A stretch of 64,000 nt of DNA from Vitrella brassicaformis CCMP3155 (GCA_001179505.1 CDMY01000508.1:1-64000); one strand, 5' to 3'; counted from the stretch's first letter, positions 9,560 through 26,488 are shown. Program-made: numbers and translations. Notes: a model not told the origin generated them from the sequence alone.

Positions 9560-12164
9560 CTGAGTGTCGTGATTGATGTGAGCATGTCTATTCATTTGGA
9601 CACCTAGGTCTCTCTTGGTTCCTTGCGCGAGCCGATGCACCTCATGAACAGCCTTCCACTCATCGAGGGTCAGTGCCAATGAAGGTGAAAACCATCACAC
9701 CACTCATACACACACATGCAAGCTCGACATGAAAGGGCTCAGCCGCTCGGCTACGCCTGCCTTCCCACCATAGTGCAACGACTCGACAGGTTTGGCAGGG
9801 TGGTGATGGCCTTGATGCATGTGGGAAACAGGCGAGACCAGACTAGCAACTCGCCCTCGTCTGCCCCCTATCTCCCTCCCCGCCCTCCGCAGCACCGTAG
9901 AAGGGTGGGGTGGCGAAGAATGCGCTGGCTGATGTGCCGGATGCGATGCTCCATGCCCTTGCCCTTCTCCTTCTCGCTGCTGCCCTTGTCGTCCCTGCCT
10001 CCCCCACCGACACATCCATCTCCATCTTGCCGCTGCGATCCGCCCCACCCGCCCCATCCTCACCGCCCTCATCTGCCGGCCCCTCCCACACCGACCAATC
10101 CCCACTGCCGTCACGGCACTTGTGAAACGCACACTTGATGCGCAGCAGTGGCCCCCCACTGTCTTGTACAACGGCAGGAAAAACGCCATGACAAGAGGGC
10201 TGCCGTGCGAACCGCACCGCCCGCAGCGATGGGAGGTCGTCTACCGTCTTGACGACGGCCTCCTCGCCCAGCTGCTGCGCCTTGCCCATGTCCATGGACC
10301 GCACCGATGGGAAGACGCGGCCGAGGTTGAAGAGCAGTGGCTGTGGGAGGGGGTTGTCGGTGTCCCTGGCCGGCTGCAGGGTGAGGGTGCGGGCTGAGCT
10401 GAAGACGAGCTTGTTTTAACGTGAGAAAGCCCGGATGATGTTGTCTTGTGCGATGCTGGTGGGGAAGCTCACCGATGTGGCGAGCGAGGCCGCCAGGGTG
10501 ACTGAGGGTGGACGATTCGGATGCGGGCGTCTCGCTGTCGTAGATGTTGCGTATGGGGCTGCCGGGGTTGGTGGGCCACAGGAGGGTGGTGAAGGGGAAG
10601 TCGAATAATACGCTGCTGCTGTAGTCCTTGTGAACCGCATTCAGCGACTGTGACACCAGCAGGCAACACATGGATGCATTGGGAATGATCACTTGTTGTT
10701 GTGTGTACATTGGTCACTCACAGATATGACGCTTGGGGTGATCTGTCTGACGTTGATCGAAGCTTCAATAATCAGCAACTCCAGAAGTCGACCGGCGTAT
10801 CGAAGTCGTCAATCCAGCCCTCTAGGTCCGGCTCGTCCGCCGTCACGCTGAAGCTCGTCACCGAGTCGATGCTCGTGAACTCGACAAGCAGCATCGCGTC
10901 GTGCGCATCCCACGCGAATGGGGGCGAGAGGGAGGCAGTTGCGCCCATACCTTGTGTCGTAACCGCCGAACTCGTTGTCGTGCGCCGTCTGCTCCTGCGT
11001 ACTCAGTTTGCGCAACTCGACGGTCTTAAGAGACATGTGGCACCCACACCCACACAACAGACAGGGGCGGATTGTGCGTAGGGACCTTTGGAAGGAACTG
11101 TCCTGGATTTGCACCCACCTGAGTGTCCAGGCGCGCAGAAACGAGGCCCACGCCCACCGCCCGCCCACCACTACTGTCTTCAACCGTGGGAACTCCCCCG
11201 GCTCCTTACCCCTGTCATCCGGAAAGGCTATCTCGCGCTGCTGGACGCTGTGGCTGTCAGCCTCCAGACTCTCGAGACTCTCACCGGCGCCTTCAATCAG
11301 CCGCACCATCGCCATGTTCATGTGACACCGCATCACTGCGCGCGTGGCTTTGGCCAGCCAGGGCTCGCTCGGTGGGGTCGATGTCGCGGTCGGCGAGGAA
11401 TGTGATGGTGGTGTGCATGTCGGGGCCGCGGGAGGGTCCCAGGTATGACGAATGGGCCCGCGAGAGTCGCCGATGATAGACTCGGTGCCGACGAGGGGGC
11501 CGAGTCGGTCAAACAGCAACGCGTCAGGGAGGGTGAGTAGCGACGGCGCCAACGACTGAACAGAGCACAGCACACACACACACATGTGCCATACACTCTC
11601 TCTCTCTCTCTGTTGTGTGTGCGTGTCCAACTGCAGGTGGGCGGCTGTCAGTTTGTGACCATCCTTACATCTAGGCGTAGGTTGCGTAGCACAGCAGTAA
11701 GCTTCTGCTGTGCAATAGTGATGAGGATGTCCTGAGTGCTGGGCGGGGCATCGGCTGGGGATATCTTGGACACACCGTAATCCAAACACACCATCTGCAC
11801 ACACCAATGCACACAGGCAGGGAGATGCAAAGCGGTTGGCTCCACGTGAATCATCTTGTGGTCTCTCACCTTGGCGCTACGTTTGGGCACATGTCTTGTC
11901 CCAATGTCCGCTCCTTGCTCCCCTTGAGCGTCAGCACCTCACCAGCCTGATTGCACAGGGAGGCCCACACAGAACGGTACGGGACACTAGGGGCCCTATC
12001 CCCCACAATTTCCCCCACATGTCGCTGCAGTGCGTTAATCTTCTCTGCTACGTCTCAACACGCTCACAATGGACTCGGTCTGGATGGACCATCCAGTGAC
12101 TGCGCTTCATCAGAGCACCTGGCCAGTGTCCTTTCTCACCTCTGTGCTTCGTCTGCGACTCCAT
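9560..12164 (-). CDS. F-box-like, lineage-specific multi-exon protein (3' end uncertain)
   Basis: Candidate start MESQTKHR at 12164. Exon with SLLTLPDALLFDRLGPLVG (F-box-like), then FPRLKTVVVGG and LFNLGRVFPSVRSMDM. Downstream exon structure is ambiguous. Confidence 0.45.
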
Positions 12165-12778
12165 CGCCGCGACGGGGAAGCAAAAGAGTGTCCAATATCA
12201 GAACATCTCGAGGCTATTGTCGTCAGATCCCAGCTGCGAGAGGACGCAGAGCGCCAATACCAACCAAAATGCTTTCGAAGAATTCCAAGTAAAGGGCCCC
12301 CGCAAGCGGGTGCCCTTAGAGCCGCGAATCGGGCGGGGAAGGCGGCAGTGGTGCTTGCAGTGGCAGTACGATGATGAGTAGCACGAGTGGCTCCAATGGC
12401 CGTCGAGAGGTATCATCGCTTCATCTCATATATGGTCAGGTCCGCAATGAGCTCAGTGAATTCTGTGGCGTGTCAAGTGCAGGAAGGAACTCGCTAGGAT
12501 TACACTCATGCCGACAGGCAGGCGAGTGAGACACGGGGTCAGTCCGAGAGAGCATGGAGTATACGTGTGAAGTATGTGTCTGAAGGATGTATGTGTCATG
12601 TGCATCTTACGATGTGCCCTCCCAACTCACACTAATGATATACCCACACAATAATTCATGATGGGATGGATTGAAACATAACATATCCATGTACACGTGC
12701 ACACAGGCAGGGGCACACAGTCATACGTCACACAGTCAATACGTCTTAGCTTGCAGCACTTCGACTGCTCCAATGACA

Positions 12779-13078
12779 NNNNNNNNNNNNNNNNNNNNNN
12801 NNNNNNNNNNNNNNNNNNNNNNNNNNNNNNNNNNNNNNNNNNNNNNNNNNNNNNNNNNNNNNNNNNNNNNNNNNNNNNNNNNNNNNNNNNNNNNNNNNNN
12901 NNNNNNNNNNNNNNNNNNNNNNNNNNNNNNNNNNNNNNNNNNNNNNNNNNNNNNNNNNNNNNNNNNNNNNNNNNNNNNNNNNNNNNNNNNNNNNNNNNNN
13001 NNNNNNNNNNNNNNNNNNNNNNNNNNNNNNNNNNNNNNNNNNNNNNNNNNNNNNNNNNNNNNNNNNNNNNNNNNNNNN
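12779..13078. other. Assembly gap (300 N)
   Basis: Run of N. Confidence 1.
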
Positions 13079-14218
13079 ATCCATCGAAATACACATGGGC
13101 ACGAGCAGAACAAACACTTCGTGCTCCCAGACACTTGACACAAACATCGGCTGCGCACACACGCGAAGGCGGTGGTCACTGGGTTGCGGGAACACCCACA
13201 TACAGGCCGGTTGTGTGTGCGGCAGACGGTCGATACACATCCATTCACTCCATGTCAACGTCCTCCTGTCTGTCTGCTCTACCTTCCTGTTCGTACGCAC
13301 CTTGTCGGAGGGATACACGGGACTCGCGACACAGATCCACAAAGACAAACACGATGCGAGATGTCCACGTCGAATCAAGATCAGATGTATTCTGTGATGT
13401 ACTTCCTCTCACCCTCCACAAAGCTTGAAAGCCACAGCATCAGACAGCCACGGACGAACACTGTTGCAGAGTTGTGTGTTACCGTCACTGCATGTGATGT
13501 GAGAACCTGTCATGTACACACAGACACCAACAACGTGTGCTGGAGTGATCACCACGTTGTGCGTCGCTCAATGTGGCACACGACAGGGATGACGGACAGG
13601 CACCGTGACATATATGAAGGTGGACCTCCATCTCCATCTGCACAACATATGGACACACATACGTACCATTCCAGCAACATGCATCAGTTGCCTCCTTCCT
13701 AATGTGTTTGTTCGTGTTCTTGCAGGCCCTCCGTCGCCGCGACCACCCTCATGCCTTCTTCGGACTCGATTGTTAATGCGCTGTCGCTTGTGATGCCAGA
13801 AGAAACACCTTTTCTGCCTCTTCTTTCCACTTGTCATCTTGGTCTTTACAGTCTTCGCTCTCCCTCAAGAAAAAGATCCGCAGCAAAGATCCGCAGCATG
13901 CAGCGGTTTCAGGAATTACCCTAGGCAGCCAGGCGGCAACAGTCCCGTTGTCAAACTCGGTGCCTTTTTTCCCGAGGTTTCAACGCGCTGGGTGAGTAGT
14001 GGGGGTGCCAGCAACAGCACTGGTGTGAGGTGACCTTCTGTTCTTTCAGTTCGACCGTGATCGACCGTTTTGTCTGACCGCACGCCTTCCGTCTGAGAAA
14101 GACGACGACCGTGCTGAAGTGTCAGCCCGATTCGCGGAATCAGTGAAGGCAGCAAAATGGGCGAAGAAGGAGCAGGCTGATCGCCTCCTGGCAGCTACAA
14201 GGCTCAACTTCTGTCGAG

Positions 14219-16551
14219 ATGCGTTTTCTCTTCCTGTTGCCGCTCTGCGCGGCCCTGTTTCTCCTGCCCGGCCCGTGCTCATGCGTCGGTCGTCCCGCAG
14301 AGCCCTTTCCTAACCCCCAGCGAGACCTCGAGCAGTGCGGTTTGGTGCAGCCGGCGTGGATCTGTGACCCTGACCACGTCCTGTCGTCGGTGACTGAGCG
14401 GGAGAAAGTGCAACACATCCTCAACGACATATACGAGAACGTGCAGGTGGAGTGCCCAGATGGATCAAAGAAAGGATTCCAGGTAGGGCAGGCAGCTGAC
14501 ACAATCAATGGTCATGTGTGTGACTGGTATGCGCTGATTGGTTGGTGCAGGTTGGCGTCGCATTGGTGGAGAAGATGATGATAGGCTGGGCGGACGTCGA
14601 GGACATGGCCTCAAAGTAAGGCAGCAGCATCTCTGGACGGCCGATGGGCAGGCCAGCAATTGCCTCCCTACTGTGTTTCCTGCTTGCAGGTATGCATCCA
14701 AGATCGGTCGCCAGTGGGGTGTGGGCCACGCCGGCTGTGACAACGAGGTCATGTTCTTCATGAGCTTAAGGGACCGGGTCGTGCACATCAAGACGGCGCG
14801 ACAAGCGGCCATGCGCGTCAGTGACTACGACATCGATGGTATCATCGAATCCATGAAGTGAGTGAGTGAGTGAGTGAACATTCGAACCTGTTGCAAGCCT
14901 GTCCTCCTCCGGTCACTTGACTTGATGCCTCTCTGCCCTGCCCTGCAGGCCGTCTTTGCGTGCCGGCAAGTACGACAAGGCGGTGCAAGGCGGCCTCATT
15001 CTGCTGAAGCGCGAGTTGCAGAAGCCCCCCCGCCAACCTGTGGACATTTCCTTCGTTTTCAGCGCCTGGGTGGTTCCCATATTCGTCGTGGTAATGGTGC
15101 TCGTCTGTGGCGGGTGGCGGGTGATCGCTGCCCTGCTGATCGGCATGTTCATGGGCTTGGCGAGTCTCATCGGACATGCCATCGCGACTGTGGCCGACTG
15201 CTGCAGGTGAGGGTGTGGCTCTGGGAGGAGTGAGTACATCTGTGGATGGGATGGATGGTGCAACTAACTGTTTGTGTGTCTCTTCCAGGAACATGCTGGT
15301 CAAGCGGGAGCGAGCCGAGGCCCAGGCAGCCCTCGACCGTGTGGCCAACGAGCTGGGCGTCACCCCCTCAGCCCCCCCTCTCGACCCAGACGCCCAGCCC
15401 TCACCAGTGACCGCCCCCTCTCCCTCTGACTCGCCCACCCACCAGTCGCAAGCCATCTACCACCTGGTGGAGGACAACACGTCGCACATCTGTCCCATCT
15501 GCTTGGAGGATCTCATCCCACCCCGCACGGACAAAACCGGCACGAAAAAGAAGGACCAGAAGGACAGCGGCAAGGGTGGGTCGGGCGGAGTGCGTGAGCG
15601 AGAGGTCAAGGCGCTGCCGTGTGGCCATCGGTTTCACAAGGTCAGCACGCATCCCGCCACATACACAGATCGTTCGCTGACTGACATGTCTCTGTCTGTC
15701 TGTGTGGGTGCGTCTGATAGGTGTGTGTGGATGAGTGGCTGCGGGCGGGCGGCGCCACCTGCCCCCTGTGTCGGGCCGAGGCAGGCGACGACGACACGGG
15801 ACCGCCGCTGGCACACGAACGACCTGACGAACGACGGTAGGCGTCTACCCGCACATCAAAAGATACTCACAACAAACCCATCCACTGACGCACCAATGGT
15901 TCCTGCAGGTATCGTCGTCGCGTTGAGTACTTCCTCCGTCGGCTTGCGGCTCGGTTTCCCCGCACGCTCGGCCGCTCCGACATGGGCGCCTATCGCACGA
16001 CATTCATGGGCGCCCGGCCACGGCCCACACCACACACGGGCGGGGGGGCGTGCTTCACGACCTACCAGCCGCCTGTTTTCATCCACGTGAGACAATAACA
16101 ACCGAACACACAACAGACAGACAGTCGAAGGACGGCTTGTGTTGTTGTCCACGTGTGTGTGTCCAGGTGCCCCCCGTCCCCCAGCCAGCCCCTCCCCCCG
16201 TGCGCGTGCCCCTGCCGACGTTTGAGCAGACATACAACAATGTAAGCACAGTACACACAAGAGAGAGATTCCAAACGCACAGGCAAGAGATACTCTTCAT
16301 TCACGTGTCCTCCCGCCCGTTAGATTCGCTGGGTGCTCACAACTCCTGTCGTGCCGCCCGATGCCTTCGCTGCCCCAACCACCACTCACCGCCCCGACAC
16401 GACGACCCAGACCACCCAGCCCCACCAGGCGCCGCATCAGGCCCACCGCCACCACGATTGGGGCGGCTGGAGCTTCGGCCACTCGAGCACTGGTTTCGGC
16501 GGTGGGGGCTTCTCGGGTGGGGGCGGGGGCGGGAGCAGCGGAACATGGTGA
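14219..16551 (+). CDS. Signal peptide + TPM (MOLO-1/YgcG-like) domain + TM segments + RING-H2 finger + Gly-rich C-terminus
   Basis: MRFLFLLPLCAALFLLPG signal peptide. FPNPQRDLEQCG...WICDPDHVLS and IGRQWGVGHAGCDNEVMFFMSLRDRVVHIKT (TPM). Hydrophobic segment 15050-15190. CPIC...LPCGHRFHK|VCVDEWL...CPLC (RING-H2). Ends GGGGFSGGGGGGSSGTW*. Confidence 0.8.
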
Positions 16552-17210
16552 AGAACGAAGGCATTGTATGCGGGTCGAGAGGGAGTCCAGGGGCAGATAC
16601 AATGATGGGGCGAGGGAAGGGGGGACGGAGGGTAGGTGCACTGTACAGGCAACAAATGAATGACGTGGGTCGGGTCGGAGGGAGCAAGTCTGGTATACAT
16701 GTATTTGTGCGAGTGTGGGCATTCATTCTTTTTGATGGAATCGAATCGCCTTCCCTGTATGTTGCCCGCCCTCGGTGCGGACGAGCACGGAAGAAAAGAC
16801 AAAGGGGAAGGGATTGCGAAAGGCGCGAGGCAGATTTACCGCTTTTGTGCAATAATTTGGTTCTGTGTGAAGAATCAGAGCCGTCAGTTCCGCTGGCAGT
16901 GTCGGAGGCCGCTGCTCACGGTTGAGACGGTGATGATGCTCCATACGTTGGACCAACTCAATGAATGCACAGCGACAGACGAATGGAATCGGGCACCAAC
17001 CCGTGACAGTGTGTGCACTACAGATTAGTGGCCACGTGTATGTGTGTGTACAGTAAGCACATTGCCTGCTATTTGATCAAGACTGACAGACAGACACTGC
17101 ACTGCTTCGTTCGTCTCAATGGTTTGTTAATAGCAGTCTGTCTCGATTCGATAAGTGTCTCATAATTCTCACACAAAGCATCAACACAGAGGTCTCTCCC
17201 GATTCACACG

Positions 17211-19840
17211 TCACACGTCAGTCACCACAACTGCGCGCTTCCGCCGCTTTGCCGGCGGCCCGCCTGCATCCCCCATCTCCGCTGTGTCCTTGCCCTGCTG
17301 CTCACCCCGTTTGTCGGTCCCGAAGCAGGACGTGAGTGGAGTGCCCTTGAGAAGTGGCTGGTTGGTGAAGAGGCCCACAACAGGCAGATGGCTCTCCACT
17401 TGGCCTCGCAGGATCATCTGCACACATGACATGCACGGACAACACCGACCGCACAAACAGGAAGGATGTCTGCCTGCCTCCATCCATGACACCACCCACC
17501 CTGCTTTGCTCACCTTCTGGTTCAGGTTGGTCTGCTCCGAGTGCCTCACAAAGCGGGCGGCGTTGCCAAAGTATCGCGTGTCGATGGCCGGCAGGGTCAA
17601 CTGCCAGTCGGGGTCAGCTCTCTCGACGTCTTCGGCGTAGCTGACTTGGATGAGTGGGTACCAGTCGTGTTCGTTGGCGGTGTATCGCGCGTAGCGGCAG
17701 TGGCTCTCGGCGACCGAGATGAGCTCACCAGCAACCTCCAGCACGTAGGTGTCCTTGTCAATGTCCTCCTGATGGACCCATACAGACACACAGATGTGTA
17801 CAAGTGCTCGCCTGTTTGCTTGGGTGGGCGCATGAGTGTGGTATGCTCGCTTACATCGGCGATGAGCTCCCACTTGCCGTCGTCTGTCTTGCGCACTGCG
17901 ACCTTCTTCTGCAGGCCAGGCTTGTACCCCCTGCGGACACCACAGAACCACAACCTGTCGCATCACGCATCCGCTGTCTCGCTGTCACGTACATGAGCTT
18001 GTTTGTCGGAATCTCATCGGTCCTCCGTCCGATGTCTTGCGAATCCGCACACCCGCCACATGCCCACTCACTGAGGTCATTGGCGGGCACCTGTGTGCTG
18101 GGTGGGCCAGCGAGCAGCTTGGTGAAGGCCACACACTGCGGCACATACCCATAGCCAGTGGGCACCTCGCCCGGCTCCCCACCGATGACACGCATCATGC
18201 CCCTCCTCTCTCGCCCCTGTGACGCATCTTTCTCTGCCTCCCAATCCCTCAGCGGCTCGGCGAGCAGCAAGCAGACGGCGGTGGGCGTGCGTTCGTCGAG
18301 GCCGCTCTCTGGCTGCACGATGGGCAAGTATCGCTCGATGACGCGGTTGGCGAGGGATCGTGGCACAGGGATGGTCTCCATGCGAAAGGGGTTCCCGTAA
18401 GTGAGGCACAGCTGGAACGGGAAGAAGCCGTAGCGACTCCAGTTGGGGACCTGAATCACAAATCAAGCGACGTACATCTGCTCGAATGCACAGACGTGTA
18501 CAGACGTGTCACGAGCATTTGGTCGCTCACCGTGTTGTCAGATGACGATGAGCTTCTCTCAGCCGCTCCTGCTGCTGCTGCTGCCGCGGCAGCTGGTGCA
18601 GGTGCGGGCTGGCCGCCTAAGTGGGCCACCACTCGGCCATGCCACTCCTTGGTCGGTCGAACATCCTTGCAGGCGGCGGCAAGCGCCTTGTCGAAGGCCT
18701 CCTGGAAGGTGTCCAGCCATATGATCTCCTTCCACTGCAAGGTCTTGTGTGATCCGTCCGACCGCCTCACGGCCAGCGACAGCCGTCTCGGCGAGCCTCC
18801 CCCGTTCTGATCGTGATCAGCCTTGTTCTTGGTTGCCAGCCTGCGCATGTGGCCGGGCTCATGGGCATCGGGCAAGCGCTTATCGTTGATGGGCGGCGTG
18901 TAGTCGGGGTCCTCCCCTGGCTGTGGCGTCAGATACTCCATGACAAACTTCCACACACGAGTATGCTTGACCGTGTCGCCCTCCTCCTTGTCGTCCTTCC
19001 TCGCCTTGATGATCTCCTCCCTGCCGACCTCGAAAGCCTCCTTGATGACATACAAGCCGTCATAACGATACCCCCAGCTGGACGTTGCCGAGGAAGGATA
19101 AGACACACACGTTGTGTGTGATGGATGTCCAGTGTACCTACCAGGGAGCGAATTTCCTTGGGTTGTCTTTGTAGCCCCGAATGACACGCACGGGGATTTT
19201 GTTTTTGGAGGACTGGAGCATGGCCCTGTTGCTCTTGTTGGTCATGTCTTGATCCGCCCCCTTGCCTTCGCCCGCGTACATGATGCGATCCAGCTTGTCC
19301 AGATCCTCATACATACTGTCCCCGCCCTCCCCGCCCATAGCCGCCACTGATCTGGTCACCCACTTGCCGTCCTCCCGCTGCAGGGTGCCTATGCCTTTCA
19401 TATTCTCCTGATGCAGACCCAAGAGCTTCAGAGTGGAACCTGAAACGCAGACAGACAGACGTAAGTAAGTCACAGTCTGTCAGCCAGGGTACGGTACACG
19501 GCACGTGTGCGCGTGACGGACGCTTACGGTAGGGCAGGATGGTGCCCGGTGGGACGGGGAAGTAGGGCAGCCCCACCACATGCCGCTCACTCGTCAGTCC
19601 GAGCTCCTCCTCAATCTCCCTGCACACAGCACTGTCGTTTTTCTTCTTCAAGCCCGAGCCAGCACCCTCCACGCCTTCCTCGTCGACCGCATCGGGGTTG
19701 CTGGCGTCCATCACTAAGGCGAACTTGCGATAAAGATATTTCCACTGGCCCTCCTTGTCGCCGCGCTCAACCAGATCATCCCAGATGGCTTTCTGCGCCT
19801 CATTGAATTCCGCCGTCACTTCTCTCACGCAATCATCCAT
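17211..19840 (-). CDS. SRA/YDG + SET domain protein (SUVH-like architecture)
   Basis: SRA motifs YEDLD..IMYAGEG..DQ..N.AM..S...PVRVIRG and YRYDGLY. SET motifs VLEVAGELIS, IDTRYFGNAARFVRHS and GLFTNQPLLKGTPLTSCF. C-terminal PPAKRRKR NLS-like tail. Confidence 0.85.
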
Positions 19841-20555
19841 TGGCTCCGATGCAATTCGCTTCCACCAGGAGCAGTCAGGCAGGATCCCTCACTCCTTCAA
19901 ACAAGACAGGCAGCATCATTTGGGTGGAACACTCGTCCCACCTCTGCTTCTGTTCACCTGTTTCCTTCCGTTCGATTCCTTCTTTCTCCGCGCGAGCTTA
20001 GCTCCGATCGGAGGGTAAATGGCGAAGGGAGGGCACAAGGAGGCCCTCTACACCACCAGGGGCACCCAAGGTCCCAAAAGAAGCCTCTCGGTCATCCTCG
20101 AATCCATGAGTTAAAGACGTACCAGTGGCGATGGACGAACGGAAGATGTACAATTTTTGAAGATGTACGGGACGCCCGTTGTGCCAAGGAGGAAAGCATC
20201 TGACAGATGAGCATCCTGCGAGCAAAACCTCACTTTGCCGGGTAAGTAGATAATCCATCCACGACCCCCACACCCCCCACTGAATGACACCAAGTGTGTG
20301 CGGTACGCGAAGATCTGTCGGCTGACAAGACAAAGCACTGCTCTTCACTTCACGTGCAGCAGCGGACCCACCTCATATAGCCACATGCACATGAAACAAA
20401 GTCCGTGCACAATCTCATCCACAGATCCTGCAGCATGTGGAGATTAAGATAAGTACACAACCTCGTAGGTATCAGTCGCTCTGTCATCGATCGTATGCAT
20501 GCATCCGATGCATCCGTCCATTGCATTCTCCCGCTCAGGGAAAAAAACGCCCAGG

Positions 20556-22105
20556 TCACAGCACTGTGGTTGAGTCCCAGCAGAATCTCCTTGATGCTGA
20601 CTGCTGCAGGCCATCCAGCACACCCATCTGCGCCTCACTCAAACGGAAATCATACACCTGAGGTCACATGTGCACCACCACACACGCGAATGAACGAAAC
20701 GTAGACAAAGGCGCCTCTCCGTGCACACCTGCAGGTTGCCGCGAATGCGGTCTGTGTGTGCGCTTCGCGGTATGACGGGAACTCCATGCTGCAAACTCCA
20801 CCTCAGCAGCACCTGCGCAGGAGTGCGATGGCACTCAGAGGCGACGCGCAACACAGCTGGATGGGTCAGGAGAGCCGAGTCGCCTGACCCAAGTGACGCA
20901 TACCTGCACACACAACAGACAGACACATGAACCAAAGCGTGACATACCGTGCAGTGCAGTCTGGATGCGGCCGTGTCTGTCTGCGTACCCCTGAATGACC
21001 AGTGGAGCGAAGGCAGGCGCGTCAGCGCCGCTGGTCTTGTCCCTCGGGGGCAGCCACGCGAGGAGGTCGCGGCGAAGGCAAAACGGGTGAAACTCTACCT
21101 GAACAAACCAAAAGTGATAGACACAGGTACCGACTAACTCATTTTGCCTTGTCTGATTGATGGACATGTACCTGGTTGACTGCCGGTGGGATGCCTATCC
21201 CGTCCTCATAAAGCGCATCTAGTGGGTGGAAGCGACGCAGGCAGATCATACCATGAAAATAGCAACCAACACATGTGCGGTGCGCACCGCACGCCATTTG
21301 TGTGTGTGTACCGTACCAAGGTGGGATGGGTTGAAGTTTGACACACCGATGGCACGCACCTTGTTGTCACGACACAGACACTCCAAAGCCTGACGGTAGA
21401 AGCCATGACTGGGCGATCGGGGGGTCCATCCCTTTCCTTGATAAGTGGCTAACCTTCCAGCTCTCATGGCGTGCCTTCCGATGCACTGCGTCCATGTGCT
21501 GCCTCTGAGGACACGACGGGCGCAAAAGGCAGCCGTGAGGCGTCGTAAATGGCATACGTGGACACGTGACAGCCCCCAGCACTCATCGCGTGTGTGTCAC
21601 CTTGGCCACGCCGGGCCAGTGCAGCAGGTAGAGGTCCAGCTGCTCAACGCCCAGCCGTCTCAAGCTCTGCAGGCAGGCCGCGTAGGTCTTGTCAAAGCCC
21701 TGAACACAAGACACGACCACACAAACATACATTAGGACCTCACCTCAGTGACTGGCGTGGCGTGAATCTCCCGCGTACAGTACCATCTCGTATGGCGATG
21801 CCTTGCTGGTGATACACACATGCTCACCACCATGACGCGACCGCCATCGACTCAGCGCAGCCCTGCATACAACACCAACAGAGGAGAACCAAACACGTAT
21901 CCAATTCACGACTCATGAGTGCCACTGCTTACTTGACATGTTCTTCATTCTTGTAGATGGATGCCGTGTCGATAAGGCGATAGCCGCACTCTAGGGCGGC
22001 CTCCACCGCCACCTCGCATTCATGGCCCTGCAGCCGATACGTGCCGAAACCGACTCGCGGCATTTCGATGCCTTCCCCGATGCAAACTGTCTTCCTTTCG
22101 TCCAT
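20556..22105 (-). CDS. Aldo-keto reductase family protein
   Basis: First exon MDERKTVCIGEGIEMPRVGFGTYRLQG...GYRLIDTASIYKNE. Then LDLYLLHWPG, VRAIGVSNF, VEFHPF and TPAQVLLRWSLQHGVPVIPRS. Last exon ...RFCWDSTTVL* with stop at 20556. Confidence 0.93.
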
Positions 22106-22676: not shown

Positions 22677-23506
22677 GGTGACTGGCGGACACACAGCAGA
22701 AACCGAGAAAGACAACTGACTGACTGAGAGAGACAGAGGAAACAAACACAGTCTGGCCGTGTCTCACAAAGATGAGCTCAGGTTTTCTCTTTCGTCTGTC
22801 GTTGCGGCTGGGACAGTATCTGACTGACCCCGGGTTGTCTTTCTTTTGGCTGCTACTGGCTGCTGTGGGCCTCGACCTCTGCAATGGGGCACCCGGCACG
22901 CTTATGACTATCAAGGACACTGCTGTGTGGCTCATGAAGCTAGAGATACAGATAGGAGACGTCACTATCGACTGGCCGAACGTCCTGGCACTGGCGGTAA
23001 CTTACGTCACTGTCTAGCTGCTGATGTCAGAACAGAGGACACGGAGGTTCCTGACGTGGCTGAACAAAGTCGCACGAGGCTGCTACGTCACGTGGTGCTT
23101 TTTTATACTTCCTGTCTTCACAAGCTGTGTGGTTGTGATTATCGTCTATTATGTGGTCCATCTGCTGGTTGTTTATGTGGCTGTTTATGTGGCGTATCTA
23201 CTGACGACCCTGACGATCATGGTGACGCAGATGACTGCTATGACGCTATCACAATGGCATTCGTCAGCTCAGTGGCATCTTACTTAGGGTGCGCAGCAAC
23301 GTTTGCCGTCAACCTGACTATGACAGCTATCGTCTATCCGTCTATCGGTACCCTGGCTGTGTGGTACCTCAACCAGAGAGCAACAGGTCTGGGCTACACT
23401 GGACTACTCTTGCTCATCGTGTGCATGATGCTGCTACGAGTGCACGCGCTGCCAATCTCACCAGCCAACCTGACACACAAGGGATGCAGACACACACTCG
23501 ATTTAT

Positions 23507-24856
23507 TTGTCAAACTGCTCGTGCTCACAGGCATCCCTACCTTGCTGGTTGGTCGTTGGGTGGTGTGGCAATGAAGGCGAAAGCGACGACACTAGCTCAA
23601 AGATACGTCCATGGGCATTTCCTAGTGAGTTCAAGGCTTACGGGGATGATTTCCAGAAATGGAAGACGCACTTTGAGTCGTGGGCGTCGATCAATGGCTT
23701 GGCTGACGTCGTGGCTGACGAGGCGCTTCACGAGAGACCCCAGCTGACAAAAGTCGGCGACAGGCCTGAAGTAGAAAGCGACCCCGAGACTGGCCTGTGG
23801 ACTGATGCTTACAACCAAGAGCACGCGAAGTGGGAGACGCTGAGCAAGCAGCAGAAGGACGAGATCCACAAGCGTCATCTCATTCACGCTGAGCTCTTGA
23901 CTGCCTGCAATGGCAACGACACTGCCTTCAATCTGGTGAAAAACGCACAGATAGAGGCAGCAGAGGAAGACAAAGACCCACTGTTAAAGGTGGATCGATG
24001 GCTGTCTTGGCGAGCTCTGATAGCTAAGTACAACCAGGTGTCACCCTCTGAGTTGTCGAAGCTGCACACCCTTATCCGCACGTATCAGTGGAAGGGCGAT
24101 GCATCCAATCTCGAGCCAAACCTCGGGTACATGATCGGCAAGTTCGAGAAGCTGAAGTCCCTTGAGGCTCAGCGCGCCAAGATGGACGAACAGCACACAA
24201 AGCTGGTGTATGGCTTGGACGAAACCGACAAAATAGCTGCCGTCAAAGCCATCCTGCCCAAGCAGGCATACCAACAACCGTTGGCCTTCCTCAACCTGCA
24301 GCAACAAAACGAAGCAAACAATAACTTCGCTGCGTTTCAGCAATTGCTGCGCAACCACTGTGACCAGAACCTCCCAAGGTCTGCACAGAATGCGAACACG
24401 AGCAGCTCAGCTGCCGGCGCACAGAATGACATACTCATGACCAACAATGGCGAGTCTGTCGTGCCCCCCTTCGCTCACTCGGCAATGACCCGTGATGAGG
24501 TGATGGCCAAAAGCAACTCCACCAAATGCGAGATCTGTGGCATGACGAACCACACGACTGGGGAGTGCTGGCACCTGGGCATAGCTCGGGATGCTGTACG
24601 AGCCCACACAGGCCGTGGCAGAGGCGGTCACGGGACATCCCGAGGGCGGGGCGGACAGAACGGCAACGGCCGTGGCCATGGTGGTGGACCTAAGAAGGGA
24701 AACAACCACACCATCGGCAAGAAAAACCACAAGGTGAGTGCCAAAGGCACCACTGAAACAGACAGAGATGTGCATCGCACCCACCAAATGAGTGAGGATG
24801 GCGAGAAGCGAGCAAGAGCAGCACACAGCGCTGATGGGAATGTGTGGCCCCCCTAA
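23507..24856 (+). CDS. Copia-type Gag
   Basis: N-terminal FQKWKTHFESWASINGLADVV, WRALIAKY, zinc knuckle CEICGMTNHTTGECW (CX2CX4HX4C) and a GRGRGG basic tract. The ORF opens at TTG, with no in-frame ATG before about 24130. Confidence 0.88.
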   Translation: MSNCSCSQASLPCWLVVGWCGNEGESDDTSSKIRPWAFPSEFKAYGDDFQKWKTHFESWASINGLADVVADEALHERPQLTKVGDRPEVESDPETGLWTDAYNQEHAKWETLSKQQKDEIHKRHLIHAELLTACNGNDTAFNLVKNAQIEAAEEDKDPLLKVDRWLSWRALIAKYNQVSPSELSKLHTLIRTYQWKGDASNLEPNLGYMIGKFEKLKSLEAQRAKMDEQHTKLVYGLDETDKIAAVKAILPKQAYQQPLAFLNLQQQNEANNNFAAFQQLLRNHCDQNLPRSAQNANTSSSAAGAQNDILMTNNGESVVPPFAHSAMTRDEVMAKSNSTKCEICGMTNHTTGECWHLGIARDAVRAHTGRGRGGHGTSRGRGGQNGNGRGHGGGPKKGNNHTIGKKNHKVSAKGTTETDRDVHRTHQMSEDGEKRARAAHSADGNVWPP

Positions 24857-25543
24857 CGTGGCTCAGGACATCAGAATGCCCACAGCTGTAGCTAGGATTC
24901 CCTCAGTTGTGCAGTGCAATGTCGCAGCTGATGTTCACGCTGACGCTGTCGATGCTCTTCATATACATGATGAGGCACTGCTTGACTCAGGCTGCAGCTG
25001 GCACGTCTTCACTTCTCCTGATTTCTTTGTGCACCTCAGGCCGCTCCCACCAGCAACCAGCCAACTCAAGGTGGCCAACGGGGCAAAGGTGGCTACAGAG
25101 GGCGAGGGCGAGGTGGCCCTTAGGGTCAACCTGAAGCCAACAAACAGGACAAGACGCCTGTACAAAGGCACGGTGCCAAAGACGCACATAGTGCGATTGA
25201 CGAATTGTCTGTATGTGCCTGACCTGAAGTACAATCTTCTCTCAGTCAGTGCACTCGAGGACGAAGGATACAATACACGCATGGATAGCCGCACTGTGTA
25301 TAAAGAACCATACACACATTCATTTGTGCGGAAGGGGAGGCTCTACGTGCTTGATGTGTCACCTGCTGCTCACGCGGACAGGGCGACCAACGAATGCACC
25401 ACACGAGAGGCGCCTGCAGCTGCTCACGCGGCCAGGCCGCAAGACGCTACCTATCCTGTGTGTAAGGAGAAGGAAGAAACGAATGGGAAGTCAATGACAG
25501 GCATCATGAATGCAGTCAGCAAGTGCCGTTCCTATTTCTCGAA
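24792..25543 (+). CDS. Copia Pol N-terminus: aspartic protease / beta-barrel region
   Basis: LLDSGCSWHVF, LKVANGAKVATEGEGEV and NCLYVPDLKYNLLSVSAL. In the +1 frame relative to gag. Confidence 0.88.
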
Positions 25544-26488
25544 ACAAGGCGGCATGTATTGCGGCTACGCAGCGGCTGGGATATCGAGCACTGACGGCGA
25601 CACAACACTCTGGGCACAGAGGCAGCACGAGTAGACGAGTAGCATACACGCATGTCTGCGTTTGTGATGCGGCTGTCGTGAGTGCAGGCCGTTTTTCGAC
25701 ATGCTGCCGATCAACGGCGGGCAGGTGACGCAGCAGCATGCTCTCGGCGGCCATTCATATGCAGCGCCCGGCTCCAGCAAAATCGACATGCCGCTGGTGG
25801 GCGAAGAACGTGATTTGCGTGTGTAGCCATTTTTCTGTGACGATCAGCCGAACAGCGGTGATTTCATGATGCCATCGAGCAGCGACATTGAGGACGGTAG
25901 ACGAAACTAGCGAAACGGGAGACAAGTGTTGTTCATTTCTCGTCTCCGTTAGGTTTTCTTGGCCGTCCTTTTGTGCCAATTCTGAAGCGCTAGGTATGAT
26001 AAACACGTGAAACACGTGCACTGAGATGGGAAGGAGGGGGGCTGCGTGCGTCTGTTTCAGTTTCGGTCGATGGAGGAAGAGTTGCAGGACCGGTTGTCTG
26101 GCACTTGACCACTAAGACACGCCCGACACATTCCGCCCACGCCAGCCCTTTTTTTCTCGGCTGTGTCCTGTGTTACATTCATTCACATACTCAGCAATGC
26201 GCTGGACGTTTTCTTCTATACGTGTTGAGGGCGGTGGCGTTCTTTCTGCACGTAATTTTTCGCCGTAGCGGCCAGCCTCGGTGTGAGGCAACCAGACATG
26301 TTTGTCAGACGTGTATGTGATTGAGTGACTTAGGGACGCTATGTGCTTGAAAGCTCGTTTCGTGTATCACATCACGTGCATGTCTTTAAGAGGCATAGGT
26401 CTTTGCACAGCTACTTCAACACAGTAATCATGCCCACACGTATCCTCTGCCAATCACATCCCTCTCGAGATCCAATCGCCGCAACACC

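What the first reader, a model, noticed from the sequence alone, without database searches (positions are those of the whole stretch)
17211..19840. SUVH-like SRA-SET protein with an apparently dead SET domain in a non-plant genome
The SRA methyl-cytosine pocket motifs look intact (YED, YAGEG, DQ, PVRVIRG, YRYDGLY). Every SET catalytic signature is altered: GWG to KWE, EYxG to EVAG, RFxNHSC to RFVRHSE (SAM-binding Asn to Arg), and ELxYDY to PLTSCF (catalytic Tyr to Phe). There is no post-SET Cys cluster. SRA+SET is the plant SUVH architecture, and SUVH2/SUVH9 are known inactive readers of DNA methylation. Inference: an independently evolved pseudo-methyltransferase reader, implying a 5mC-linked silencing pathway in this lineage.
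Basis: partly seen in the sequence, partly recalled or inferred. Interest (0 to 1): 0.75.

Follow-up and report, generated by a model that had tools for sequence, protein, structure and literature searches.

The report
SRA reader with dead SET domain
An expressed gene of the alga Vitrella, a photosynthetic relative of malaria parasites, joins a domain that reads chemically marked DNA bases to a histone-methylating domain that has lost its catalytic residues, so it probably works as a reader or adaptor; papers describe this design only in green plants, and its function here is untested.

Summary
Window 17211-19840 (minus strand) is a 7-exon gene. All six coding introns appear in spliced transcript contigs from two studies, and one cDNA contig carries the whole reading frame. 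The product is the public 717-aa protein CEM18749.1 / A0A0G4FVW6 of Vitrella brassicaformis, auto-named "YDG domain-containing protein". Pfam finds SAD_SRA (residues 96-220, E 1.6e-19) and SET (559-681, E 7.7e-8), with no Pre-SET. No cysteine follows residue 680, and no other frame or intron in the locus encodes the canonical motifs. The SRA keeps the base-pocket motifs but has a very short finger loop. I found no close relative in any search. The most likely reading is a nuclear, non-catalytic SRA reader or adaptor, analogous to plant SUVH2/SUVH9 but degenerated differently. Not shown: that it reads 5mC, that Vitrella DNA carries 5mC (a survey lists only DNMT4-like and DNMT2 genes), or where the SRA-SET fusion came from. 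Earlier notes of this scan report other SRA-SET loci elsewhere in this genome. This is a new variant of a known kind, of moderate interest.

The parts
17211..19840 (-). Whole coding region of the 717-aa SRA-SET protein (7 exons, 6 introns), equal to CEM18749.1 / A0A0G4FVW6
19528..19840 (-). Exon 1 (aa 1-104): N-terminal helical region and the start of the SRA domain
   Evidence: Spliced contigs. Two helices at residues 2-47 in an otherwise poor model. The SUVH9 alignment starts at residue 34.
19142..19439 (-). Exon 2 (aa 105-203): SRA core with Y148-E-D150, Y159-AGEG and PVRVIRG
18531..19077 (-). Exon 3 (aa 204-386): end of the SRA domain (YRYDGLY 207-213), then a spacer with an Ala/Ser low-complexity run
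17993..18450 (-). Exon 4 (aa 387-538): spacer with no Pfam family and only six scattered Cys, so no Pre-SET cluster
17855..17930 (-). Exon 5 (aa 539-564): SUV39-type lead-in GLQKKVAVRK and K558-W-E560 in place of GWG
17514..17768 (-). Exon 6 (aa 565-649): SET core with EVAGE (17724-17738) and RFVRHSE (17535-17555)
17211..17417 (-). Exon 7 (aa 650-717): SET C-terminal part with PLTSCF (17322-17339), an NLS-like KRRKR (17235-17249) and the stop codon; no post-SET cysteines
19029..19555 (-). SAD/SRA domain (aa 96-220), spanning introns 1 and 2
   Evidence: Pfam E 1.6e-19. Best solved relative is the SUVH5 SRA, E 5e-12.
17322..17872 (-). Degenerate SET domain (aa 559-681), spanning introns 5 and 6
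   Evidence: Pfam E 7.7e-8. EHMT1 E 3e-6. The Atlas model of residues 540-717 matches SET clusters at TM 0.63-0.69 by query.
19894..19956 (-). Intron in the 5' UTR (about 63 nt)
   Evidence: Joint 19893 to 19957 in an X8 contig

Best explanation
This is an expressed nuclear chromatin protein of Vitrella brassicaformis. Its N-terminal SRA domain binds DNA by flipping out a modified base, most likely 5-methylcytosine. Its C-terminal SET domain keeps the fold but can no longer bind AdoMet or methylate lysine. The protein would therefore act as a reader or adaptor: the SRA docks it on marked DNA, and the SET-like module plus the roughly 300-residue spacer serve as a binding surface for histone tails or partner proteins, such as active SRA-SET paralogues or a DNA methyltransferase. 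Plant SUVH2/SUVH9 work this way in recruiting Pol V. Shown here: the gene model, its expression, the domain identities and the loss of catalytic motifs. Inferred: lack of activity, the ligand of the SRA, nuclear localisation and the adaptor role.
For: The gene is transcribed and precisely spliced in two studies, and a full-length cDNA contig exists. SRA is found at E 1.6e-19 and SET at E 7.7e-8. The SRA keeps the Y-x-D ... Y-x-G-x-G, DQ, PVRVIRG and YRYDGLY motifs and is closest to the 5mC-binding SUVH5 SRA. In register with EHMT1, SETD2 and SUVH9, the SET domain has N to R in the NH motif, the terminal catalytic Y to F, the active-site Y of EYxGE to V, the F/Y-switch F to S, and both Gly of GWG lost. 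All Pre-SET and post-SET zinc ligands are absent. From established knowledge of DIM-5, SUV39H1, G9a and SET7/9, these Asn, His and Tyr residues are needed for AdoMet binding and methyl transfer. No alternative frame or intron encodes the canonical motifs. SUVH2/9 give a precedent: a diverged NH motif, no post-SET, no AdoMet binding, yet required in vivo (PMC2582956). The 717-codon frame is intact; by my estimate, random 58% GC sequence would carry about 0.035 stops per codon. The SET fold is still recognised by profile and by the Atlas model. A KRRKR motif at residues 706-710 fits nuclear import. A candidate DNA 5mC methyltransferase (DNMT4-like CEM15752) is listed for this genome.
Against: There is no biochemical evidence. 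Some PR/SET enzymes such as PRDM9 are active without an NH motif (from my own knowledge), so motif loss does not prove inactivity. There is no orthologue in any database searched, so conservation of the degenerate motifs, and therefore selection on them, cannot be shown. The first pocket Tyr is ambiguous in the alignments. The finger loop between GEGKG and DQ is about 3 residues, against 10 or more in SUVH5, TagI and UHRF1, which could weaken or change DNA binding. 5mC has not been reported for Vitrella. CpG observed/expected in the window is a flat 0.85, with no clear methylation footprint. Both AlphaFold runs were uninformative.
Confidence: 0.55

Rival explanations
1. It is still an active lysine methyltransferase with an unorthodox active site, possibly acting on a non-histone substrate or only in complex with a partner that completes the pocket.
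For: The SET fold and the His of the NH motif are retained. PR/SET enzymes such as PRDM9 work without a canonical NH motif (own knowledge). Johnson et al. also could not fully exclude activity for SUVH2/9.
Against: Five separate catalytic or cofactor positions are changed non-conservatively at once, including the invariant terminal Tyr. The post-SET module that closes the AdoMet and substrate channel in SUV39-class enzymes is missing.
Confidence: 0.12
2. It is a decaying, functionless paralogue: a transcribed gene on its way to becoming a pseudogene within a lineage-specific SRA-SET family.
For: It is an orphan with no detectable orthologue. Earlier scan notes, unchecked, describe another SRA-SET-RING locus in this genome as frameshift-broken.
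Against: The 717-codon frame is intact, six introns are spliced exactly, and a full-length cDNA exists. The SRA motifs and the hydrophobic SET core are kept while only the catalytic positions changed, which is the pattern of a pseudoenzyme rather than random decay.
Confidence: 0.15
3. The SRA reads a base other than 5mC (5hmC, 5hmU, 4mC or a damaged or mismatched base), so the protein belongs to a pathway other than cytosine-5 methylation.
For: The residue that contacts the methyl group in UHRF1 and SUVH5 (Ser/Gln of YTG-S/Q-GG) is Glu162 here, and the finger loop is almost absent. The second-best solved match is the bacterial modification-dependent endonuclease TagI. No DNMT1/3/5 or UHRF1 is listed for Vitrella. 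SUVH5 and UHRF2 SRAs also accept oxidised 5mC (PMC4740795 title and abstract).
Against: The best match is a 5mC-binding SRA, the stacking-Tyr and Asp motifs are of the 5mC type, and a DNMT4-like gene is present.
Confidence: 0.15

Closest known systems
Arabidopsis SUVH2 / SUVH9 (SRA-SET proteins without detectable methyltransferase activity, acting in RNA-directed DNA methylation)
   Same: SRA lies N-terminal to a SUV39-class SET. The Asn of RFxNHxC is replaced while the His is kept, and there is no post-SET. The predicted role is a reader or adaptor rather than an enzyme.
   Different: SUVH9 keeps the Pre-SET and the ELxxDY tyrosine and has CYxSHS rather than RFVRHSE. The Vitrella protein also lost GWG, the EY tyrosine and the Pre-SET cluster. 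Its spacer between SRA and SET is about 165 residues longer. It comes from a different eukaryotic supergroup. No Pol V/DDR pathway is known outside plants (own knowledge).
Arabidopsis SUVH4 (KYP) / SUVH5 / SUVH6, active SRA-PreSET-SET-postSET H3K9 methyltransferases
   Same: Same domain order. The SRA is most similar to SUVH5 among solved structures (E 5e-12), and SUVH6 gives colinear two-stretch matches.
   Different: The catalytic motifs and both zinc modules are absent. The SET part scores far better against animal EHMT1, SETD2 and SUV39H2 (24-30 bits) than against SUVH6 or SUVH9 SET (5-8 bits).
Chlorophyte SRA-SET proteins lacking Pre-SET (class IV-1B of Chlorella and Micromonas pusilla)
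   Same: SRA followed directly by SET with no recognisable Pre-SET (PMC5725981).
   Different: These are green-lineage proteins.
UHRF1 / UHRF2
   Same: Same SRA fold and base-flipping motifs. The KFAPxxGYRYDGLY and DQxxTNxxNRA segments resemble UHRF1 more than SUVH.
   Different: There is no UBL, tandem Tudor, PHD or RING domain. The NKR finger loop is missing. A published survey scored UHRF1 as not detected in Vitrella.
Other inactive SET proteins (for example KMT2E/MLL5)
   Same: The SET fold is retained without a competent catalytic site. KMT2E appears among the weak PDB matches.
   Different: Unrelated architecture with no SRA. That MLL5 is inactive is from my own knowledge and was not checked here.

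Membership tests
SAD/SRA (YDG) domain proteins | Significant match to the SRA profile, with the YxD...YxGxG, VRVxR and YDGxY motifs | tested here: met
   Pfam PF02182 at E 1.6e-19, 70.5 bits against a cut-off of 30.7. SUVH5 SRA at E 5e-12. Motif positions.
SAD/SRA (YDG) domain proteins | Binds DNA with a flipped modified base (5mC) | not testable with these tools
   This needs binding assays. The pocket motifs are present, but the alignment of the first Tyr is ambiguous and the finger loop is about 3 residues.
Plant SUVH (SRA-PreSET-SET-postSET) | SRA N-terminal to SET in one polypeptide | tested here: met
Plant SUVH (SRA-PreSET-SET-postSET) | Pre-SET Zn3Cys9 cluster | tested here: not met
   No PF05033 hit at E up to 1. 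Only six scattered Cys lie between residues 250 and 558.
Plant SUVH (SRA-PreSET-SET-postSET) | Post-SET CxCxxxxC plus the Cys of NHSC | tested here: not met
   No Cys after residue 680, and NHSC is RHSE.
Plant SUVH (SRA-PreSET-SET-postSET) | Phylogenetic placement inside the SUVH clade | not tested
   No homologue sequences could be retrieved. Pairwise scores are mixed: SRA is closest to SUVH5, SET is closest to EHMT1 and SETD2.
Active SET-domain lysine methyltransferases | NH motif (Asn-His) that binds AdoMet | tested here: not met
   R639-H640, in register with INH of EHMT1 and SUVH6.
Active SET-domain lysine methyltransferases | Catalytic Tyr at the end of ELxF/YDY | tested here: not met
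   F681 in PLTSCF.
Active SET-domain lysine methyltransferases | GxG motif and active-site Tyr of EYxGE | tested here: not met
   K558-W-E560 and E575-V576.
Active SET-domain lysine methyltransferases | SET fold | tested here: met
   Pfam PF00856 at E 7.7e-8. The Atlas model of residues 540-717 gives TM 0.63-0.69 by query to SET clusters. My own AlphaFold run failed.
SUVH2/SUVH9-type inactive readers | Conserved CYxSHSxxPN replacing RFxNHxCxPN, with Pre-SET retained | tested here: not met
   The sequence is RFVRHSEQTN and there is no Pre-SET. It is analogous to this group, not a member.
UHRF1 family | SRA combined with RING (and UBL, TTD, PHD) | tested here: not met
   Only SRA and SET are found. 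The RING gene next door is a separate, convergent gene.

The most novel reading that the evidence does not exclude
Chromerid algae have their own circuit linking DNA modification to chromatin. It would be built from a lineage-specific family of SRA-SET proteins, some active and some pseudo-enzymes like this one, together with orphan reader-fused cytosine methyltransferases. It would have been assembled independently of the plant SUVH/CMT loop and lost in the parasitic apicomplexans. This protein would be its non-catalytic targeting subunit, possibly reading a base other than 5mC.
Probability: 0.12. Interest if true: 0.8.

Novelty: new variant of a known kind. Interest (0 to 1): 0.5.

Why it matters
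In the papers I could search, SRA-SET proteins are described only for green plants and green algae. There they couple DNA methylation to H3K9 methylation, and the inactive SUVH2/9 pair couples it to Pol V recruitment. An expressed SRA-SET protein with an independently degenerated SET domain in a chromerid suggests one of two things: either coupling a base-flipping DNA reader to a SET scaffold is older or more widespread than thought, or it evolved twice. It also gives a concrete handle for asking whether the free-living relatives of Apicomplexa use modified DNA bases in chromatin control, something the parasites largely lack. The gene is short and has a full-length cDNA, so binding and activity assays are straightforward.

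Tried and rejected
1. The word-index protein search was run three times: on the SET piece, on the whole protein, and on SRA residues 85-245 at E up to 10. Each returned nothing or only the protein itself.

2. The exhaustive HMMER search of 1.84 billion representatives with the exon 6-intron-exon 7 reference returned only the protein itself. E-values there are for the whole library, so relatives below about 40 bits, including divergent paralogues in the same genome, would not be listed. This is not proof that none exist.

3. Scans of metagenome and viral contigs found no relative.

4. Single-sequence AlphaFold2 of residues 440-717 and 1-250 gave mean pLDDT 31 and 34. I did no fold search on these models. 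No alignment could be supplied because no homologue was retrievable.

5. CpG observed/expected was tried as an indirect 5mC footprint. It is 0.85 and flat across genes and the retrotransposon, which is uninformative.

6. I checked whether an alternative exon or frame could restore the motifs. No NH[S/C], [FYL]DY, GxG, EYxGE or CxCxxxxC is encoded in any minus-strand frame of 17100-18100, and contigs show a single isoform.

7. Rfam found nothing in the window.

8. Literature: I found no paper on SRA-SET in chromerids or alveolates. The Iyer/Aravind comparative reviews could not be reached, and one search was a poorly chosen search.

9. I rejected the idea that the neighbouring RING gene is part of this protein. 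It is a separate convergent gene whose transcript merely overlaps at the 3' end.

Full report
**What is in the sequence.** The window is GC-rich (about 0.58) eukaryotic DNA with short GT..AG introns. On the minus strand, five overlapping ORF fragments between 17211 and 19840 join into a 7-exon gene:
- 19840-19528
- 19439-19142
- 19077-18531
- 18450-17993
- 17930-17855
- 17768-17514
- 17417-17211

Laying public run contigs on 17100-20000 showed each of the six predicted introns skipped exactly, with CT..AC ends on the plus strand, in runs X1, X2 and X8. It also showed a seventh intron in the 5' UTR, with no sequence differences. X3 is an unspliced genomic contig and is probably the source assembly.

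A look-up by exact protein returned two records. One is the GenBank contig CDMY01000508.1 of assembly GCA_001179505.1, where the gene sits at the same coordinates as in the window. The other is a 4697-nt Logan cDNA contig (L002) with the uninterrupted 717-codon frame at 75-2228.

In a script I joined the exons only to test identity with the database protein. They are identical. All searches and folds of the full-length protein used the database's own entry P0001, not a model I had joined.

**Identity.** P0001 came back from the exhaustive HMMER search. It is CEM18749.1 / UniRef100_A0A0G4FVW6 of Vitrella brassicaformis CCMP3155, auto-named "YDG domain-containing protein". The genome is therefore an alveolate (chromerid) and not a plant, as earlier scan notes had already suggested.

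**Domains.** Pfam finds SAD_SRA at residues 96-220 (E 1.6e-19) and SET at 559-681 (E 7.7e-8). There is no Pre-SET or any other family at E up to 1.

Against solved structures, the SRA matches rank as follows:

| Structure | E-value |
|---|---|
| SUVH5 | 5e-12 |
| Bacterial endonuclease TagI | 2e-7 |
| SUVH6 | 4e-7 |
| SUVH9 | 6e-6 |
| UHRF1 | 6e-5 |

The SET part matches EHMT1 (3e-6), SETD2, SUV39H2, SETMAR, NSD2 and DIM-5.

With the whole protein as query, SUVH6 and SUVH9 give colinear two-stretch matches, SRA then SET. Their SET stretches score only 5-8 bits, against 24-30 bits for EHMT1 and SETD2. The distance from SRA to SET is about 165 residues longer than in SUVH6 or SUVH9. This spacer includes an Ala/Ser low-complexity run.

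The ESM Atlas places the whole protein nearest to streptophyte SRA-PreSET-SET clusters (score 0.93). Its own model of residues 540-717 superposes on SET-domain clusters of the SUV39 and ASH classes at TM 0.63-0.69 by query. These are leads that agree with the profile hits.

**The SET domain is degenerate.** In register with EHMT1, SETD2, SUVH6 and SUVH9:
- GWG is K558-W-E560.
- EYxGE is E575-V-A-G-E.
- RFINHxC is R-F-V-R639-H640-S-E642.
- ELxFDY is P676-L-T-S-C-F681.

From established work on DIM-5, SUV39H1, G9a/GLP and SET7/9 (my own knowledge), the Asn-His pair and the terminal Tyr are needed for AdoMet binding and methyl transfer. The EY tyrosine and the Phe/Tyr-switch residue line the lysine channel.

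The protein has only 11 cysteines and none after residue 680. The Pre-SET Zn3Cys9 cluster and the post-SET zinc site of SUV39-class enzymes therefore cannot form. No other frame or intron of the locus encodes the canonical motifs. Only one splice form is seen, although contigs cannot exclude rare isoforms.

The hydrophobic framework, the SUV39-type lead-in (GLQKKVAVRK) and the spacing between motifs are all kept. This pattern is typical of a pseudo-enzyme rather than random decay.

**The SRA domain.** By analogy with SUVH5 (Y416, D418, Y428; numbering derived from the 3q0b construct and my recollection of that paper), Y148, D150 and Y159 would sandwich and hydrogen-bond the flipped base. M118 sits at the thumb position of Q392 in SUVH5 and V446 in UHRF1.

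Two caveats apply:
- HMMER aligns the first Tyr of all references to E141 with a 5-residue insertion. The Y148 assignment needs a different gap placement.
- The loop between GEGKG and the conserved DQ is about 3 residues, against 10 or more in SUVH5 and TagI, and UHRF1's longer NKR finger. UHRF1-type hemi-CpG discrimination is therefore not expected.

The C-terminal SRA segments (KFAPxxGYRYDGLY, DQxxTNxxNRA) look more like UHRF1 and TagI than like SUVH. The SRA is thus not clearly of the plant type.

**Relatives.** No close relative was found. The three word-index searches returned nothing or only the protein itself. The exhaustive HMMER search returned only the protein itself. The metagenome and viral scans found no relative. 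Library-wide E-values hide anything under about 40 bits, so divergent paralogues are not excluded.

Earlier notes of this scan do describe several other SRA-SET loci in the same genome: a head-to-head pair, a Tudor/Agenet-bearing one, a broken SRA-SET-RING locus, and a note on altered SAM motifs in two paralogues. They also describe orphan cytosine methyltransferase genes. I could not reach those sequences, so I treat them as leads only.

**Literature.** SRA-SET architectures are described for Streptophyta and Chlorophyta, including SRA-SET without Pre-SET in Chlorella and Micromonas (PMC5725981).

SUVH2/9 have a diverged NH motif (CYxSHS), no post-SET, no detectable AdoMet binding or activity, and methyl-DNA-binding SRAs (PMC2582956).

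For Vitrella, Funabiki et al. 2023 list a DNMT4-like protein (CEM15752) and DNMT2 (CEM37813). They find no DNMT1, DNMT3, DNMT5, UHRF1, CDCA7 or HELLS, and leave the 5mC status blank (PMC10538959).

The chromerid genome paper, a eukaryote-wide chromatin survey preprint and a dinoflagellate histone survey do not mention SRA-SET in this lineage. I could not access the Iyer/Aravind reviews, so earlier mention there is not excluded.

**Interpretation.** The most likely reading (about 0.55) is a nuclear, non-catalytic SRA reader or adaptor. The nuclear part rests on the KRRKR motif at residues 706-710. The protein is functionally analogous to SUVH2/9 but degenerated independently: different replacements, more motifs lost, and Pre-SET also gone.

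The rivals are residual or unorthodox activity (0.12), a decaying paralogue (0.15), and an SRA that reads a base other than 5mC, which is compatible with the adaptor reading (0.15).

The origin of the fusion is open. It could be shared with the green lineage, transferred from it, or convergent. The SRA leans towards SUVH5 and the SET towards animal-type SUV39 and SET2 enzymes.

**What did not work.** Both AlphaFold2 runs, made without an alignment, gave pLDDT 31-34, so I attempted no pocket modelling or fold search. CpG observed/expected is a flat 0.85 and says nothing either way.

**Verdict.** This is a new variant of a known kind (an SRA plus pseudo-SET reader) in an unexpected lineage. The protein is already in public databases under an automatic name, but I found no paper that discusses it. 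Interest is moderate.

Noticed in passing
window 17418-17513 (minus strand): Intron 6 is 96 nt, in frame and free of stops. If retained, it would insert 32 residues rich in Cys (CLCGRCCPCMSC) between the RHSE and PLTSCF motifs. No contig shows retention.
   Followed up: partly
window about 14219-16551 (plus strand); L001:13290-15622, L002:2888-4591: A convergent neighbour encodes a 567-aa protein with MOLO1/TPM_phosphatase and RING domains. Its transcript overlaps the 3' end of the SRA-SET transcript, so assemblers merge the two into one contig.
   Followed up: partly
window about 20556-22063 (minus strand): The upstream neighbour is an aldo/keto reductase gene (288 aa in the public gene call).
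   Followed up: no
window about 22800-25650 (plus strand): A retrotransposon-like stretch with a Pol polyprotein beta-barrel domain (PF22936, E 1e-15) lies 3 kb from the gene. Other first-reader notes on this window concern its LTR and its gag-pol junction.
   Followed up: no
window 12001-14000: An AT-rich island (GC 0.446 against about 0.58 around it). It has a 243-aa ORF with no Pfam match.
   Followed up: no
window 1-64000: TpG+CpA observed/expected is high (about 1.4) while CpG observed/expected is only mildly low (0.85) and uniform across the window. I did not interpret this.
   Followed up: no
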